From assembly GCF_964204865.1 (NCBI RefSeq), contig NC_135255.1:11098001-11162000 (forward strand): a DNA stretch of 64,000 nucleotides, read 5' to 3'. Positions within the stretch are counted from its first letter, which is position 1. Each line of letters starts with the position of its first letter. Shown here in pieces: positions 1,799 through 55,395 of the stretch. Source of the DNA: Styela clava. Taxonomy: Eukaryota. The translations under genes and the position numbers were made by a program. The notes beneath the pieces were generated by a model. The model saw nothing but the letters and a program-made list of their open reading frames with translations, did no database searches and had not been told where the DNA came from.

Positions 1799-3651
1799 TC
1801 AGCATGCTTTCTTCTCTCTGCCATCAGCCACATAGACATCTTTATGAATTGTGCGATTAGCTCTGTTGCTCAAATAGGAATTCCAGAACAATGCGACTAT
1901 TTGGCAGAAGAGCATTCTGAACAAATAATTAATATATCATTATTCATTATGCTCAATTCCCTTATTTTGCTACAAATTTTATATGCTTAATTTACTGGAG
2001 CGGCTATGAACTGTCGCACAGCCGCTCCAGTAAATTAACTCTGCCAGAAATCTTAAACGCTGCAGCTTTCAAAAAATATTCATTACTGAGTACTGACTAA
2101 ACCCACCTGTATTGAAAAGGCACGATTCCAAAATTGATCGTTTGTGATGGAATCCAAACCTAAATTTAAGTAAAAAAAGTTGCAGAATAAAGAATTATTT
2201 GTTGAGTTTTTGGATCTCTGAAGGCTAAAATTTCACAATAATATCTGTCAGGATGTTGTAAGATCCTAAGATAATATTTCTAGGTAAAACCTACCATCCA
2301 GTTCATTTTGATAATTCCTGGAACTTCATTTTTAATTCTACTGATTGCAGTCGACAAAGATTTCCCATTAAGTAAAGTTTGAACAGTGAAGAAGCCGCAG
2401 AGCAGTGGTGGTGTTATGACAAACTGGATAAACAAAAATATAAATACAGTATAATGGAGTTGCGCAAAATACTACAAAGAAGCGCAATCTAATAACGTCA
2501 TCATTGAATTACTTGGGGAAAATAATCCGATTTACCATGGCATTCAAAGAGTTTTTAGCAAAAAACTTTGCAAGCAATTTTGGCCACGTGACGGCCGCCA
2601 TTAATTCAGATTATTATTGAGACAAGCGTGGCGCGATATGATGCATCTGACGTGGTGCCAGAAGCCCCTCGTTTGTGAGACACATAGAGTGTTTGTTTTA
2701 TTGAACCAAATGGAGAAAAATTCTTAGAATTTGAATAGTATGTCGTACTGGTATCAGCAAGAGGATGTAGCCACGAAAAGAATTTCTAGGTCACAATGAC
2801 ATCAAGCCAAAGTTATATAATACAATGATGCTAAAAACAAAAACCAGTGTTCACAACCATGATCTGAAAATGGATTTAAGTAAAAAATATAACCACCTGA
2901 TCTAGTGCCACAGAAAAAATGACGGGAAGAGCCATCTTGTTTACTGCAGTGAACCAAGCGGCTACCAAAGGACCCTAAAAATAAATTCGATGAAATATTT
3001 AATTCAATATTCCATCCATGTCTATATATTCAAACGTAAAATATATTACAAAATAAAAGAATCCGCATGTCGACATAACAGCAGTTCGGCGGAAATCATA
3101 CTTCTTCTTTTTTTCTATAGTAGTTTGTGCAAGTATATCACCAACTGTTACCAAAGTTCCTAAGTAAAAAAATATTTATTTCAGCAAGCACTTAGAAGCC
3201 TAACTATACAAATTCAGTATTGATTGGTTAACTAGTCAGTAATGCACTATTGCTTGTGGGAGTAATAGCCTAACAGTTTAATATAGGCGTGTTGCATATT
3301 TGAAGTAATTAAAGACACTAAAGAAAATGTTAACTTGGGTAGTATGCATTACAGAATTTGGCTACTCCATTACCAGAATCTCTTTCTTGCAAAACAGGGC
3401 ACAAAGTTATCATTTGAACTGTCTACAGACTGTGGTGCTGTACCAACAACAAAATTCAAATGCTATCTGTAGAACATATTACTAATACATGTATAATAAG
3501 TAATGATATTGAGTATTGTCATTTTACGAAATAAGAATAATGTGCTTTAAAATTATAACAGCCTACCAGCAGTTACAATTTGAGTCATCAAGGGTCGTTT
3601 GTCCACCAGTTCACTATATGCAGCAAATAATCGAAGAATGAGACGCTTCAT
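1799..3651 (-). CDS. Mpv17/PMP22-family membrane protein, paralog A (exons 3651-3567, 3159-3050, 2974-2897, 2423-2295, 2159-2107, 1916-1799)
   Basis: Spliced translation MKRLILRLFAAYSELVDKRPLMTQIVTAG..GDILAQ..RRT..GPLVAAW..LDQ..NWMVWIPSQTINFGIVPFQYRMLFCQIVALFWNSYLS matches Mpv17 motifs; all introns GT-AG and in phase. Confidence 0.9.
1987..2038. repeat. Perfect 19-bp inverted repeat hairpin in the last intron of Mpv17 paralog A
   Basis: TTAATTTACTGGAGCGGCT (1987-2005) / AGCCGCTCCAGTAAATTAA (2020-2038). Confidence 0.85.
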
Positions 3652-4479
3652 ATTTACGCCTTGAAGTCGTAATTAACTAATTCTGTGCGGTACCGGTACG
3701 GTACGTTATCTATTTTGCTCTATATTAAAAAATAATAGTAAACTGTTAATCAAATGCATGTAATTTTTATTTCTAAGTTGTAATGCATCGACACATGCAA
3801 CTCGGATGATATCGCATCCAGCCATCATAATCACATTGCAGCAAGCCAGCAACCAATCCATCCAAATCGGCTGACACGTGGCCGACGTACAGTATAGTAT
3901 TTGATATTGATAAGGACTGAAGGATGTTTCCCCGAGGGATTTTCTTTCCTGTTTAATCATTTTTTTGAGTAATGATGCTTACTCGGAAAGCAGTTGTCAG
4001 ATTTTTGATTTCTGCGTCAATAAAGATGACATACACCAGGCCGGCTAAAAACCTTTGTGTGTCGCGGGCCACTTTCGTATGACGAAATTTATCGCGCGCC
4101 GCAAACGTTTTTACCAAACCAATCACGGGGTCTAATGTAGTTTCGTACCTGAAGTAGCCTACTTCCAGTGAGCCTAGCATAAAAATTTTGCATATGTCAA
4201 TCCCAACCCCCACCTGACTGCGACATTTAAAAATTACGTTACTACGACGCCACAGCGAAGTAAGGGCCTTCAAACTATACGCACTGCCATCCAAGACGCG
4301 CAGAAAATCATCCGATATCGTATGTTAGTCGTTGTCCGAACTTGAGTTCGTTTTTCTTGCACCCAAAAATCGGTCCGGTTTTAACGATGTAGTCGCCAAG
4401 GCATGCATTGCTGCGGAAAAGACGACGATTAGTGATGGAGGATCTTATCTTGCCCTTTACGTTCTTCATACAAGAAAAT

Positions 4480-7315
4480 ATCAGGTCGCAAACATAACAT
4501 AATTGCTGCCAAATAGGAAAATGATTCGTGTTGCATTTATTTTCAACTTCGGAAACTTTTCAGAAGCCACATATTCGCGATAGAATCGATAGAATTCATC
4601 TATTGAAATTTCATTGAACTTTTTCTGGATTAATTCATCGCATTAGTTACATCTTAAATGTTGTATAACAAAATTAATATTTCGCTCCTGTAAATGGAAA
4701 TCATAAAAGCGCTCACTGAACGTGTTTTGCAATTCAGAAATGCCCTTTACTTGTCAAGCTGGTGCTCGAATAGTCTCAGTTTAGCTTGCAATGCATTCAC
4801 ATGACTGAAAAGAGCGTTGATCAGTTGTTCTATTTGTTGTAGTTTAAAGTTAACAATGGCTAGATGAGAAGATATATCAATGAAAAATGAAAAATCTGCC
4901 ATAAATTGCGGATTGTCAAATTCCAAAATCGGATTATTTTTTAAATTCGTGAATTCTTGGATTGGATCTTTTAAATTGGCAATTATTTATAGTACACTTG
5001 CACGACTCAACCAGCGTAGATTGCAGTAGTAACTCACCTCGCCGTGATCTGCTTCCCATTCGGATGTTAAAAAGTTTTGAAACTGACGGTGGTTCAAACC
5101 GAATAAATTATTGTCCCAATAAATTTGACCACATTAATTATCACCTTCATAGCAGCATCAAATCTCAACGTTTTTGCACATTAATTTTCTTGGTGTATAA
5201 TGCAATGATAATAATCCATTATACCAGGGCTTCCCAAACTAGGGGCCGCGGCCCTGAAAGGGGTCGCGAAACGAATTCTAGGGGCCGGGAAGAGAACACC
5301 AATTTTACACAAAGTACGATATCTATTGCACTTTTTCACTCTTGATTTGAAATACAATTATTAAAAATTGTGTAAAACGATAACTTCACGATTCCGAGTG
5401 AATACACATCATCATACCGTGACATTGTCTTCAATTTTCTTCCGAACACTAGGGCTCATTTTGGGGGGGATGTAGAGAATAACGATATTTTTTTAATATA
5501 CAAATATGAATACCGAAATACTCGTATATAAATAATATAATTAAATATGATACCAATTTCATAGCACGTTTTCATTTAAAATAGCTGCTACATATAGATT
5601 ATTAACCATTTAAAAAGTAGATTTTTTTCTATCGACTAGGACTCAGTAGTTTTCGAACTTTATTGTATTGCGACGCCCTCCAGAAATATGCTCAAGTTAC
5701 CACTTCTCGTGAAACGTACCGTTCGTATTGATACATTTCAATATAATACCTTTTTTTGCAATTAGTTTTATATAAACGAACAAACAAAATCTAACAACAG
5801 TCAGTGAAATCACATTTATCGGGCCGTGGTAGAAAAGCCTGCTTTATATAAATACAAAATCGCAAATGAGATGGGGTGCGCAACGCTCTTTAAACCAAGG
5901 AAAAATAATCGGTATCTACAGAAAACCGAATTTTCAGAATTGAACTTATTTATTATAACACCATCACAAAATTTTGCGACGCTCTAGCAGAATTGAAACT
6001 TCCACGGGATTAGGTGAACAAATTGCGCTATCGACGAAGTCTTTTTTCAAGGCGAGCGGTTGAATTAAAATCATTTTGGGGGAAACACGGTAAAATCATC
6101 GCGCTTGCATAACAATGCATATTCTGATCGTTTGACCCGATTTGCTTGCTTGCATGACAATGCCGGCTTTAAACGCTAAGCTAGCGTTTCCGGAAAGCGA
6201 TTTGCTCCGTGTGCCTCAAAACATATTACATATTATATTTATTCCAAATGTTTTATTGTTTCTCATTAAAGCAAATGATGTGTATATGAATCAAATTAAT
6301 TTTACCGTTCTATATTATTTACTTTCTGTTACGTTGTTACGTAACAGGTAAACCCTAATGCTGCAATTTCGTTGGCCGCAGTTTATTCATTTGCTGAAAC
6401 GAGTTTATCGAACATGAGTGAGTTTTAAGAATTTTAAAGGAAAGCTAGGCAGAGTTAGGCCTACATGTTTTAGAAATCTCAAAAGGCACAAAGTACATAT
6501 TAACGATGACAAACTTGTGTTTTATTTTGCGGCAGCATATTTTTTCAGTGGAGGTGCGCCATTAGTTTTTTCCTTGATGATTTGGTGACGCTGAAAACCG
6601 CTGCTTTAGGCTAAGTTTGATCAATAAGAGTGAACAATTCCGGATTAGGACCAGGTCGTCGGTGGGCAGACATCGTAATTTATCATTAGGCCTGCATAAA
6701 CAAACATTGCGCCACGGCTGAACTTGCTATGCAGCAAGAAGCATTCGCACCCATTACATTGAATAATGAGTACCTACAGGTGTTTTTGTTATTGAGTAGC
6801 CCTATTAAAAGTTGAGAATTAGCTGTGTCAATAAAATATCGAAAATGCATATTTTGAACTGTTTAGCATTATTCGCGTGAACAAGGGCCGCGAAAAATTT
6901 TAATATAGTAAAAGGGGCCGCGAGCTCAAAAGTTTGGTAAGCCCTGCATTATACTGTATATGTCTTTATCAATTCCGTCCGGATGTTTTTTTTAAAAGGG
7001 CGACCAAATCAGTGTATTTCCCGATCATGGACGGCGCTCTGTCTGTATTCACGCCCGCAAATTTTTCTAAACGAAAATCGTATGACTCAATCTCGTTCTT
7101 TAGTGCTTTGAACATATCTTCGCCTCTCGTGCGGTCTTTTAATGAAGCTGTGCTCAGACGTTCTTCAAATACATAGAAATTGCTATTAAGGCGGGTGCAT
7201 TGCGCTGCATGTGCAATGCAGCCTTTTATGGAATCTTTATCGCTGTATGACTTCATATTTTTAGCAGTGTCTCGAGCAATAAGATAACTTGCTTCGAAGT
7301 CATCTACCCCTCACA
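4480..7315 (-). pseudogene. Decayed hAT (Buster/Charlie/SPIN, GTF2IRD2-like) transposase remnant, split by younger insertions
   Basis: Minus-strand fragments RGEDMFKAL...TDRAPSMIG (6969-7256), HCIIHQE, LNHRQFQ..RWLSR and FFIDISSHL..FKLQ..KLRLF, with stops and frameshifts. Confidence 0.8.
5225..6946. mobile_element. Non-autonomous hAT element (1.7 kb)
   Basis: TIRs CAGGGCTTCCCAAACT / AGTTTGGTAAGCCCTG; perfect 8-bp TSD CATTATAC (5217-5224, 6947-6954). Confidence 0.92.
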
Positions 7316-53435: not shown

Positions 53436-55395
53436 ATGAAGATAATATGTGCGGGACTCCAGAAAACTGGAACGAAGTCATTAGCTGAAGCTTTACGAAT
53501 ACTCGGATATAACGTACATGATGTCTTTGAGCAATTTTACTACGAAAAAGAATTATGGAACAAGGTATTTAACAAAACCAAATGTGTATCACTCTGTAGT
53601 GTCCTGAACATCTTTTGACTATTGTCATTGATTCAGGTTCTCCGTAATACAGCTGTCATTGCTGATTATCAAAGAATTCTCGAGGATGTAGATGCTGTAA
53701 TGGACTTCCCTGCAGTAGCTGTATGGGAGAAAATTATGGAAGCATTTCCCGAAGCCAAAGTAAGCTATTTACATTACGTCATAAGCACACATTACTACGT
53801 CGGTACTTTATAGTTTTATACATGTCGGTATTTATGCAATATAAATATGCATTTTATTATAGACTGGAGAAGCATAGTATCAATGTTGGGTCTTTAGGAA
53901 CGACGTGTTCAATTATCTATGTCGATTGTATAGGCCTATATATATTGCGTTATCAATTTGCATTCTCTTCAAGCCACATTGCTTTTTTTTTAGATAATTT
54001 TAACAATCCGATCCAACGAAGATGATTGGTACACAAGCATTAAAAACCACATCGAAGTCATTAACCAATATATTCCGTGAGTACGTCTCTAAAAATAAGT
54101 TCTGATATGAAATCTGATATCACATTATCGATAGAGCTTTGTTGCCATACTTGCAGCAGGTCAAACTCGGATTGACACCGATTGCCACATGCCTCATTGA
54201 TAGAACACGGAAACGCTTTCTCTCCTCAGGTCCTATCCATATAATGAAGCAAGAGTCATATTTTACTCACCCACAAAATCTGAACCACATAATGAACACA
54301 ATTAATCAAATTTAAAGGTATACTAAAGACAATGATTGTCAATTTAGGCTACTTCGAAAAATTCTTTATATTGCAATTCGCATCAAATATATACAACTTG
54401 CGCTGATTATTTGGTTTCTGCGAGACTAACTACTTATCCTTCTTCTATGTTTTTGTGCCGGTGGATCCGTATGCATATATTGCGAGGATGCTGTAGCAAG
54501 AGTAGAGATAACAATTCTAAGTGATTCAAGAGTCTTGCTGCACACTAACACAAATATATTTCTGTAACGTTTCGTCTGACCAAGGTCAGACTTCTTCAGA
54601 CATACATAGTTCAACTACCACGAACCACGATGTATGTCTGAAGAAGTCTGGCCTTGGTCAGACGAAACGTTACAGAAATATATTTGTGTTAGTGTGCAGC
54701 AAGACTCTTGAATCACTTAGAAATATATACAATCTATAAATTCTTTATATACCACAAATTTTATTCTGTTATTTCAGGCAAAGTGAATTATTACAACAAC
54801 TTCTTCATGTGATATTGGGTCCCACGCGACAAGAATTTATTCGATATGAATCCGGATTTATACCTGCTTGCATTGGAATGACAAGGATGTGTGGAACACC
54901 TAAAGAGCCGATTCTCAGGTAAACATAGGAAAATTGGTAAAACTTATAGATAACACGTACGACGTCATTCAGATTTGCAAGTTGAAACTTCGTCACGAGA
55001 TTAGCAATTTGGCACTCTATATTTAAATTTAAAAGTTTTTTGGCAGTGAAATAACTTGAGAATTTAGATTTTTATCTTTGTTGTTCAACAGATCTCGTTA
55101 TCGACAGCATAATTGCTATGTCAAGTCAGCTTGCGAGAAAACGAAACTGTTGATATATAACGTAAAAGATGGTTGGGAACCTCTTTGCCATTTCCTTAAC
55201 AAGAAAATACCAGATAGACCTTTTCCAAAGAGGAACATAAAAGGCGGAATGGTTCATGAAGTTGCCCAACAGAAATGGGAACACGATTGTGGTTACGCCA
55301 AAGCTGTAAACAGAGAAGCGTTGATCAGAATTGGATTTTTGATAAGTGTGTTGGTTTCAATATTATCTGTCATCTTGTACTTTTTCACAATATAA
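53436..55395 (+). CDS. P-loop sulfotransferase, Sulfotransfer_4-type, with C-terminal TM anchor (exons 53436-53564, 53637-53759, 53994-54076, 54778-54918, 55092-55395)
   Basis: MKIICAGLQKTGTKSLAEALRILGY, DAVMDFP, FPEAKIILTIR..DDWY.S and LLIYNVKDGWEPLCHFL..P..PFP..N signature motifs. Confidence 0.9.
54515..54722. mobile_element. 93-bp inverted repeat (92/93 identical, 22-nt spacer), probably inverted Penelope-like LTR fragments
   Basis: Arms 54515-54607 and 54630-54722 are reverse complements; each contains a hammerhead core. Confidence 0.85.
54630..54683 (+). ncRNA. Minimal type I hammerhead ribozyme (mirror copy on minus strand, about 54554-54607)
   Basis: CTGAAGA (54638) + A + stem II GTCTGGC-CTTG-GTCAGAC + GAAAC (54664) + GTT; palindromic stem III ACGT. 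Confidence 0.7.

What the first reader, a model, noticed from the sequence alone, without database searches (positions are those of the whole stretch)
54515..54722. Self-complementary pair of hammerhead ribozymes in a sulfotransferase intron
Seen: a 93-bp inverted repeat (1 mismatch, 22-nt spacer) ending 55 nt before the 3' splice site of coding intron 3. Each arm reads, on its own strand, CUGAAGA-A-[7-bp stem II, CUUG loop]-GAAAC-GUU. The single arm difference is an A-U to G-U change inside stem II, so pairing is kept. Known: minimal type I hammerheads with palindromic stem III (here ACGU) mark Penelope-like element LTRs, can act as dimers, and those LTRs often occur inverted. An extra A after A9 is a known natural variant. 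Inference: either strand yields a ribozyme, but the pre-mRNA makes the antisense arm first, so the sense ribozyme would be locked in a 93-bp duplex. That could be a self-silenced ribozyme, an ADAR/Dicer substrate or a splicing modulator. Caveat: stem I is short (UGU/ACA), and an alternative register (AUGUAUGUCUG/CAGAAAUAUAU) would sequester the core.
Basis: partly seen in the sequence, partly recalled or inferred. Interest (0 to 1): 0.85.

Follow-up and report, generated by a model that had tools for sequence, protein, structure and literature searches.

The report
Fold-back Penelope retroelement fragment with hammerheads
The inverted repeat is a 324-bp non-coding insertion of a Penelope-like retrotransposon: two head-to-head copies of the element's leader, each with that family's usual minimal hammerhead ribozyme motif, so it is a clear but ordinary example of a known kind.

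Summary
The arms are 54515-54610 and 54627-54722 (96 nt, 2 mismatches). A minimal type I hammerhead motif sits on each strand, with C3 at 54638 (+) and 54599 (-).

It is not a stand-alone ribozyme gene. It is a 324-bp retroelement insertion (54397-54720) flanked by a 12-bp target-site duplication. About 230 nt on the minus strand is 95.7% identical to the repeat end plus 5' UTR of an intact Penelope-like element elsewhere in the genome. [quoted passage not shown] A shorter inverted copy of about 92 nt forms the other arm.

The genome holds about 1,100 such motifs above background. They fall into subfamilies that keep helix II paired, and a second unrelated family has compensatory helices I and II. 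Close neighbours among copies are head-to-head in 14 of 19 pairs and never tail-to-tail.

This matches the published min-HHR of metazoan Penelope-like elements and their inverted, one-tailed insertions. Cleavage was not tested. In the pre-mRNA the 96-bp hairpin (-170 kcal/mol) should prevent the ribozyme fold. The copy is most likely an inert by-product of integration. Its 5' boundary lies about 18 nt upstream of the core, downstream of a TATA-like box.

The parts
54385..54396 (.). Left target-site duplication (AAATATATACAA)
   Evidence: An identical 12-mer lies at 54721-54732. Other copies have 11-13-bp duplications of unrelated sequence.
54397..54514 (-). 'Tail' of the long copy. It is derived from the Penelope-like element's 5' UTR (the part between the repeat end and ~30 nt before the ATG).
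   Evidence: Part of the 95.7% match of window 54395-54624 (minus strand) to L034 3226-3457. The L034 ORF starts at 3488. Present at exactly one end in 17 of 17 copies.
54515..54628 (-). Repeat-end (pLTR) part of the long copy. This is arm 1 of the inverted repeat plus most of the spacer. Its 5' end is near the family's common boundary ~18 nt upstream of C3; the exact end inside 54611-54630 is uncertain.
54563..54602 (-). Minimal hammerhead motif on the minus strand: helix I UGU/ACA, C3 at 54599, H17 at 54566. The predicted cut is between 54566 and 54565.
   Evidence: Exact pattern match. Identical to the motif in both repeats of the intact element L034.
54629..54720 (+). Short inverted copy (arm 2). 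It ends at CACTTAG, the same point where the full-length insertion in L034 ends.
54635..54674 (+). Minimal hammerhead motif on the plus strand (the host gene's sense strand): C3 at 54638, GAAACGUU at 54664-54671, predicted cut after 54671. The G at 54651 makes a G-U pair in helix II.
54721..54732 (.). Right target-site duplication
53622..53810 (+). Upstream open stretch holding a host exon (Sulfotransfer_4, profile positions 59-93)
   Evidence: Pfam E = 4.5e-08.
54778..54919 (+). Downstream host exon after the AG at 54776-54777. The 3' end of the exon is approximate.
   Evidence: Open frame. Paralogous exons elsewhere in the genome are 44-47% identical, and in L071 the four exons lie in the same order. 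No Pfam hit on its own.

Best explanation
The locus is one insertion of a Penelope-like retroelement (PLE) of the endonuclease-bearing kind, made of two 5'-to-5' inverted copies of the element's RNA leader.

The long copy (minus strand, about 54397-54628) runs from a point ~18-27 nt upstream of the hammerhead core, through the end of the pseudo-LTR, and ~120 nt into the 5' UTR. The short copy (plus strand, about 54629-54720) covers only the pseudo-LTR end. Each copy carries the family's minimal type I hammerhead: 7-8-bp helix II, an extra A after A9, G10.1-C11.1, no loop 3, and a palindromic ACGU that can form helix III only between two molecules.

Inferred mechanism: the element's dimeric RT-endonuclease cuts both target strands 12 bp apart. 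Each 3' end then primes reverse transcription on leader RNA, one from a site ~25-40 nt before the ATG and the other from the normal 3' terminus. Both cDNAs run to the RNA 5' end, probably a TATA-driven start site, and are joined there.

Shown here: the insertion limits, the duplication, the identity to intact elements, the orientation bias, and the conservation and covariation of the motif. Inferred: the two-primer mechanism, the start site, and that the ribozymes in this copy are silent because the intron transcript folds into a 96-bp duplex. The copy most likely has no host function.
For: - Multi-copy unit with 11-13-bp duplications and one tail in 17 of 17 copies.
- 12-bp duplication in the window.
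- 95.7% identity over 232 nt to L034 3226-3457.
[quoted passage not shown] The same hammerhead lies at 3253 and 6647, and the insertion ends at the short-arm end point.
- Other subfamilies have the same layout.
- 289 exact copies of a 34-mer next to the cut site. Neighbours within 12 kb are 14 (-,+), 0 (+,-), and 2 (+,+) at 3409-3415 bp.
- The motif pattern gives 1198 hits against 89 for the reversed control.
- Subfamily changes in helix II all keep pairing. A second family has double changes at 4 helix I pairs and 3 helix II pairs.
- Junctions differ from copy to copy while the arms are conserved.
- A TATA-like box lies ~32 nt upstream of the common 5' boundary in L034 and L033, with a weaker A/T-rich box at about the same place in L060.
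- Hairpin -170 kcal/mol against -18 for the double-hammerhead fold.
- The architecture matches the published min-HHR description (PMC4209133) and published PLE features: inverted copies, a one-sided tail, internal initiation, and extension of both strands (PMC8557442, PMC11167929).
Against: - No Rfam hammerhead model matches, even at E <= 10 on 451 nt, although those models expect a closed helix III.
- In 20 sampled copies, 19 run through the cut site and the one exception (L054) looks like a deletion. There is therefore no genomic footprint of self-cleavage.
- Helix I is only 3 contiguous pairs in this subfamily.
- The tail is ~110-120 bp, longer than the 30-40 bp described for other PLEs.
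- The start-site and two-primer steps rest on anatomy alone.
- One subfamily (L031 type) lacks a clear TATA-like box.
Confidence: 0.88

Rival explanations
1. The ~325-bp unit is a self-propagating, non-autonomous fold-back element (SINE-like or retrozyme-like). It would be transcribed and reverse-transcribed as a whole hairpin and merely borrow the PLE enzyme.
For: There is a sharp peak of short pairs: 8 of 14 head-to-head pairs have anchors 125-177 bp apart. The first look found 1789 candidates for the palindrome. Both ends are well defined.
Against: The centre differs in nearly every copy while the arms are 85-96% alike. The same head-to-head form occurs in every subfamily and in the unrelated second family, and with arms of 0.8-1.7 kb. 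The unit starts at the putative start site and so lacks the upstream TATA-like box. A 96-bp perfect hairpin is a poor RT template.
Confidence: 0.15
2. This particular copy has been taken over by the host as a regulated intronic double-stranded RNA: an editing or small-RNA substrate, a splicing modulator, or a conditional ribozyme switch of the sulfotransferase pre-mRNA.
For: It lies 55 nt from the 3' splice site. The plus-strand transcript would form a near-perfect 96-bp duplex. The arms differ at only 2 of 96 positions.
Against: It is one of about a thousand similar copies, with nothing distinguishing it. The low arm divergence is what a young insertion would show. The weak Rfam microRNA matches (29.8 bits against a gathering score of 100) only reflect hairpin shape. 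No RNA data were available.
Confidence: 0.05
3. It is a miniature inverted-repeat DNA transposon (MITE or foldback) in which a hammerhead-like string occurs by chance.
For: A long terminal inverted repeat makes up most of the unit, and there are many copies.
Against: The unit is asymmetric, with a 118-bp tail on one side only. Duplications vary from 11 to 13 bp and have no sequence preference. The sequence is collinear with the repeat and 5' UTR of an RT + GIY-YIG element. The motif is enriched 13-fold over its control and recurs with compensatory changes in a second family.
Confidence: 0.01

Closest known systems
Minimal hammerhead ribozymes (min-HHR) in the pseudo-LTRs of metazoan Penelope-like elements (Cervera & de la Pena 2014, PMC4209133)
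   Same: Type I topology; 7-8-bp helix II; unpaired nucleotide between A9 and G10.1; G10.1-C11.1; palindromic 15.2-16.2 with no loop 3, so helix III forms only in a dimer; short helix I; location in both flanking repeats of RT + GIY-YIG elements; thousands of dispersed solo motifs grouped in consensus families; dual motifs on opposite strands 100-700 bp apart are reported there.
   Different: Here the two motifs are only 38 nt apart core to core, inside a near-perfect 96-bp palindrome. H17 is U (GUU) in this family. Activity is untested. The species appears not to be among those described in the main text of that paper.
Complex insertions of Penelope-like elements: upstream inverted 5'-truncated copy and one-sided 'tail' (Craig et al. 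2021, PMC8557442); internal initiation of reverse transcription and extension of both target strands (Frangieh et al. 2024, PMC11167929)
   Same: Head-to-head inverted copies (14:0 orientation bias); a tail at one end only; the 3' end of the tailed copy lies close to the repeat/ORF junction; variable target duplications.
   Different: The tail is ~110-120 bp rather than 30-40 bp. The commonest product is a very short pair whose copies both begin at one point ~18 nt upstream of the ribozyme core, which I read as the RNA 5' end. The mechanism is inferred, not assayed.
Non-LTR retrozymes of animals (tandem hammerhead repeats; bioRxiv 10.64898/2026.07.22.740005 links them to PLE pseudo-LTRs)
   Same: Non-coding, PLE-derived, hammerhead-bearing. 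The same genome has 575-588-bp tandem units with this motif (L060).
   Different: The window copy is a single inverted pair, not a head-to-tail array. It therefore cannot release a unit-length RNA by two cuts on one strand, and no circular RNA is expected from it.
L1 5' inversions by twin priming (from general knowledge, not tested here)
   Same: The second target strand primes on the template RNA, giving an inverted 5' segment within one insertion flanked by one duplication.
   Different: In twin priming the two segments cover different parts of the RNA. Here both arms copy the same part, which implies two template molecules or a switch onto the other cDNA.

Membership tests
Minimal type I hammerhead (min-HHR) of metazoan Penelope-like elements | Catalytic core C3-U4-G5-A6-N7-G8-A9 and G12-A13-A14, then A15.1 ... 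U16.1 and a non-G at position 17 | tested here: met
   CUGAAGA ... GAAA-CG-U-U on both strands at 54638-54671 (+) and 54599-54566 (-).
Minimal type I hammerhead (min-HHR) of metazoan Penelope-like elements | Long helix II (7-8 bp) closed by G10.1-C11.1, with one unpaired nucleotide between A9 and G10.1 | tested here: met
   A + GUCUGACC/GGUCAGAC gives 8 pairs with a UU loop, or 7 pairs with a CUUG loop.
Minimal type I hammerhead (min-HHR) of metazoan Penelope-like elements | No loop 3; palindromic 15.2-16.2, so helix III forms only between two molecules | tested here: met
   A-C-G-U follows directly after GAA. A double-hammerhead dimer can be drawn and scores -18.3 kcal/mol, but it is not the minimum-energy dimer, which scores -40.9.
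Minimal type I hammerhead (min-HHR) of metazoan Penelope-like elements | Short helix I (4-5 bp) flanking the core and the cut site | tested here: inconclusive
   Only UGU/ACA (3 bp) is contiguous in this subfamily. Other subfamilies have a fourth pair as G-U, and family 2 has 4 Watson-Crick pairs, UGCC/GGCA.
Minimal type I hammerhead (min-HHR) of metazoan Penelope-like elements | Sits in the flanking repeats of elements encoding RT + GIY-YIG | tested here: met
   L034 has motifs at 3253 and 6647 around a 927-aa ORF with RVT_1 and GIY-YIG. L033, L035 and L036 have motifs on both sides of the ORF; in L031 and L032 only the motif upstream of the ORF lies inside the fetched 10 kb. Domains were checked on L033 (GIY-YIG only) and L035 (RVT_1 + GIY-YIG).
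Minimal type I hammerhead (min-HHR) of metazoan Penelope-like elements | Genome-wide consensus families with covariation | tested here: met
   1198 pattern hits against 89 control hits. One-sided pair-keeping changes separate subfamilies. One copy has a G-C to A-U double change at 10.1-11.1. Family 2 has double changes at 7 pairs.
Minimal type I hammerhead (min-HHR) of metazoan Penelope-like elements | Self-cleavage at position 17 | not testable with these tools
Of 20 sampled genomic copies, 19 run through the cut site and one (L054) breaks there, probably by deletion. Published min-HHRs cleave poorly in vitro (PMC4209133).
Rfam Hammerhead_1 (RF00163) and other Rfam hammerhead models | Score at or above the gathering threshold of the covariance model | tested here: not met
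   No hit at gathering on the window or at E <= 10 on 54400-54850. The whole-genome scan was uninformative. The models expect a closed helix III and no extra A, so this does not count against the min-HHR reading.
Penelope-like element insertion (endonuclease-bearing PLE) | Head-to-head inverted 5'-truncated copies, a tail at one end, and variable target duplication | tested here: met
   14 (-,+) against 0 (+,-) neighbour pairs. One tail in 17 of 17 copies, and 11-13-bp duplications. 12 bp in the window.
Penelope-like element insertion (endonuclease-bearing PLE) | Own RT + GIY-YIG ORF | tested here: not met
   The window copy is 324 bp and non-coding. It is a fragment of the family, not an autonomous member.
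Non-LTR retrozyme | Head-to-tail tandem units, each with a hammerhead on the same strand | tested here: not met
   The window has exactly two motifs, on opposite strands.
MITE / foldback DNA transposon | Symmetric terminal inverted repeats with a duplication of fixed length and type | tested here: not met
   The tail is one-sided, duplications are 11-13 bp of unrelated sequence, and the ends are ragged.

The most novel reading that the evidence does not exclude
The thousand-odd short fold-back units may be an in vivo record of how these elements integrate. A dimeric RT-endonuclease would cut both strands and prime on two leader RNAs that start at a TATA-driven site ~18 nt upstream of the ribozyme. 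The min-HHR, whose helix III (ACGU) and helix II are both self-complementary, would then serve mainly as the RNA-RNA dimerisation module that brings the two templates together, and not as a processing ribozyme. That would explain why these motifs cleave so poorly as monomers yet are conserved.
Probability: 0.12. Interest if true: 0.6.

Novelty: new member of a known kind. Interest (0 to 1): 0.25.

Why it matters
As an annotation result, this stops a striking hairpin with two ribozyme cores from being read as a host regulatory device. It is a retroelement fragment of a kind described in 2014.

Its modest wider value lies in the family's anatomy. Copies have a fixed 5' boundary downstream of a TATA-like box. 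They use two distinct 3' end points, one at each end of the insertion. They show a strict head-to-head orientation. This gives genome-scale support for the in vitro picture of Penelope-like integration, with internal initiation and both strands extended. It also offers an active-looking family, with intact 927-977-aa ORFs, in which that model and the role of the minimal hammerhead could be tested.

Tried and rejected
- Rfam found no hammerhead, either at gathering on the whole window or at E <= 10 on 451 nt. It returned only sub-threshold microRNA and sRNA matches caused by the hairpin shape.
- RF00163 on the whole genome scored 74 of 48,684 candidates and found nothing, which is uninformative.
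I replaced it with a plain 34-mer.
- Test for a cleavage footprint: 19 of 20 anchor-selected copies run through the cut site, and the one exception (L054) looks like a deletion.
- A MITE reading and a chance motif were both rejected.
- Pfam found nothing on the 47-aa exon alone. The exon was confirmed through paralogues instead.
- MAFFT put the length difference between the two hammerhead families inside helix II. I therefore tabulated pairs with a script and did not use the count of structure pairs.
- Organism identity (a sea squirt) comes only from earlier notes of this scan and was not checked.

Full report
**Observation**

The sequence at 54515-54722 is as described. The repeat finder gives one inverted repeat with arms 54515-54610 and 54627-54722: 96 nt, 98% complementary, 16 nt apart. 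The two mismatches are 54586/54651 and 54608/54629.

The 228-nt stretch folds into one hairpin of -170.3 kcal/mol, against a shuffle mean of -45 and z = -31. The 34-nt string CTGAAGA-A-GTCTGRCCTTGGTCAGAC-GAAACGTT occurs once on each strand (54638-54671 on +, 54599-54566 on -). It did not occur in 100 shuffles.

No Rfam hammerhead model reports it, either at gathering thresholds or at E <= 10 on 451 nt. Those models expect a closed helix III, which this motif lacks by design.

**What the unit is**

The palindrome is a multi-copy sequence in the window's 377-Mb genome, with 1789 first-look candidates; the 40 scored gave 80 matches (both strands counted) at 80-96% identity.

An alignment of 17 copies with flanks shows that homology does not stop at the palindrome on one side. 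It continues for ~120 bp, whereas on the other side it ends at CACTTAG(G). Each copy is flanked by a direct duplication of 11-13 bp of unrelated sequence.

In the window this duplication is AAATATATACAA, at 54385-54396 and 54721-54732. The insertion is therefore 54397-54720, or 324 bp. Ragged ends, variable duplications and the one-sided extension exclude a MITE and point to reverse transcription primed at a staggered break.

**Link to an autonomous element**

A scan of the genome for GIY-YIG domains gave 88 matches, several inside open frames of about 860-980 aa. In the fetched loci the window element matches strongly. Positions 54395-54624, read on the minus strand, are 95.7% identical over 232 nt to L034 3226-3457.

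L034 (contig 8) carries an intact 927-aa ORF at 3488-6271. [quoted passage not shown] That linker resembles the CX2-5CxxC motif the literature ascribes to the Neptune clade (PMC8557442), so the clade assignment is tentative.

The same hammerhead lies at 3253 and 6647, which makes a 3394-bp unit flanked by direct repeats. Other subfamilies (L030-L037) place the same motif beside their ORFs. In L033, L035 and L036 both flanking motifs were seen; Pfam domains were checked on L033 (GIY-YIG only) and L035 (RVT_1 + GIY-YIG).

The window's ~120-bp extension is the 5' UTR that follows the repeat in L034, ending ~30 nt before the ATG. The short arm ends where the L034 insertion itself ends.

**Anatomy across copies**

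I mapped the 17 copies on the L034 reference, in which C3 is at 354, the repeat end at 437 and the ATG at 589.
- Both arms mostly begin at 335-346, about 8-19 nt upstream of C3.
- The long arm ends at 540-571 in 16 of the 17 copies (the outlier, L017, at 509).
- The short arm ends at 429-450 in 16 of the 17 copies, mostly 434-445 (the outlier, L008, at 464).
- Exactly one end carries the tail in 17 of 17 copies. The query used to find them contained no tail, so this was not selected for.
- The centre differs from copy to copy, and in some copies the short arm is truncated into the ribozyme.

A 34-mer just 3' of the cut site has 289 exact copies, against 0 for the control. Among the first 100 listed, neighbours within 12 kb fall into these classes:
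- 14 are (-,+): 8 at 125-177 bp, 5 at 814-1704 bp, and 1 at 7.6 kb.
- None are (+,-).
- 2 are (+,+) at 3409-3415 bp, which is the full unit.
- 3 are (-,-).

The same close (-,+) pairs appear in other subfamilies and in an unrelated second hammerhead family. The fold-back is therefore a general outcome of integration in this element class. This agrees with the published inverted 5'-truncated copies and one-sided tails (PMC8557442), and with in vitro cleavage and extension of both target strands with internal initiation near the repeat/ORF junction (PMC11167929).

A TATA-like box (TTTAAATA in L034, TATAAATA in L033) lies ~32 nt upstream of the common 5' boundary. L060 has a weaker A/T-rich box (ATTTAAAC) at about the same place, and the L031 type has none that is clear. 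I infer that the boundary is the RNA start site. The short units would then be copies of the leader from that start to the RT initiation site.

**Is the hammerhead real?**

The motif meets every sequence feature given for the min-HHR of metazoan Penelope-like elements (PMC4209133):
- helix II of 7-8 bp;
- one unpaired nucleotide after A9;
- G10.1-C11.1;
- palindromic 15.2-16.2 without loop 3;
- a short helix I;
- location in both flanking repeats.

The pattern CTGANGA-N13-27-GAAACGTH has 1198 hits, against 89 for the reversed control. Among subfamilies found in ORF-bearing elements, the four variable helix II positions all change to G-U, so pairing is kept in the sense RNA only. One divergent copy has a G-C to A-U double change at 10.1-11.1.

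A second family has different helices: helix I is UGCC/GGCA and helix II is GUUUUUCU/AGAAAUUC. It keeps the same core, the same extra A, G10.1-C11.1, CG at 15.2-16.2 and a GUC cut site. Compared with family 1, it has double changes at 4 helix I pairs and 3 helix II pairs.

The evidence has limits. The one-sided changes are few, C-to-T bias could contribute to them, and the homology of the two families is assumed. There is also no sign of cleavage in the DNA record: 19 of 20 sampled copies run through the cut site.

**Likely behaviour in this intron**

The host gene is a Sulfotransfer_4 gene on the plus strand. The exon starting at 54778 is confirmed by a paralogue with the same exon order. The insertion ends 57 nt, and the inverted repeat 55 nt, upstream of the 3' splice site.

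The pre-mRNA contains the antisense arm first and then the sense motif. The 96-bp duplex (-170 kcal/mol) far outweighs any ribozyme fold. The double-hammerhead dimer that this motif needs scores -18.3 kcal/mol, against -40.9 for an alternative dimer.

I therefore expect no cleavage here and no host function. The copy is one of about a thousand, and nothing distinguishes it.

**Comparison and verdict**

This works like, and on sequence criteria is, a fragment of an endonuclease-bearing Penelope-like element with its min-HHR. It is not an autonomous member (it has no ORF), not a retrozyme array (it has no tandem units), and not a member of the Rfam hammerhead models by score.

Earlier notes of this scan on the same genome describe similar fold-back, palindromic and tandem hammerhead elements. 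One follow-up reached the same 'known kind' verdict. Those notes are leads, and my conclusion rests on the calls cited above.

Novelty is low: this is a new family member of a known kind. The most interesting residue is mechanistic. The family shows a fixed 5' boundary, two distinct 3' end points and strict head-to-head geometry, which could be used to test the two-strand priming model. It could also test whether the dimer-only hammerhead acts as a template-pairing module.

Noticed in passing
L058-L068 (contig 1, e.g. C1:1618645-1618680, C1:5096781-5097273, C1:15140184-15140387): A second min-HHR family: CTGATGA-A-GTTTTTCTGwATAGAAATTC-GAAACGTC with helix I UGCC/GGCA. Many copies lie next to (TA)n tracts, and head-to-head pairs occur 168 and 457 bp apart. 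No ORF-bearing partner was sought.
   Followed up: partly
L060 = G000:C1:6693401-6697800: An array of 575-588-bp hammerhead-bearing units: three on the minus strand followed by two on the plus strand. It is a retrozyme-like tandem array that is itself arranged head-to-head.
   Followed up: partly
L023/L024 (C2:8220832-8224038, C2:8275345-8278551), L020 (C18:17131283-17134492): Very long open frames (1771-2871 aa) in which a PIF1-like helicase/AAA_30 region is followed by a GIY-YIG domain. They are Helitron-like proteins with a GIY-YIG nuclease and are unrelated to the Penelope-like elements.
   Followed up: partly
L034 3140-3235 and L033 about 3870-3940: A TATA-like box (TTTAAATA / TATAAATA) lies ~32 nt upstream of the point where nearly all short copies begin. 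This is a candidate internal promoter of the pseudo-LTR.
   Followed up: partly
L071 = G000:C5:11160720-11163857 (minus strand): A paralogous Sulfotransfer_4 gene with the same four-exon order. Its corresponding intron is ~500 bp, against ~970 bp in the window. I did not check this intron for the element.
   Followed up: no
L054 = G000:C3:4838678-4839511: The only sampled copy in which one arm starts exactly at the predicted hammerhead cut site (ACAGAAAT...), preceded by an AATTC-type short repeat. It is probably a deletion but could be a cleaved-template copy.
   Followed up: no
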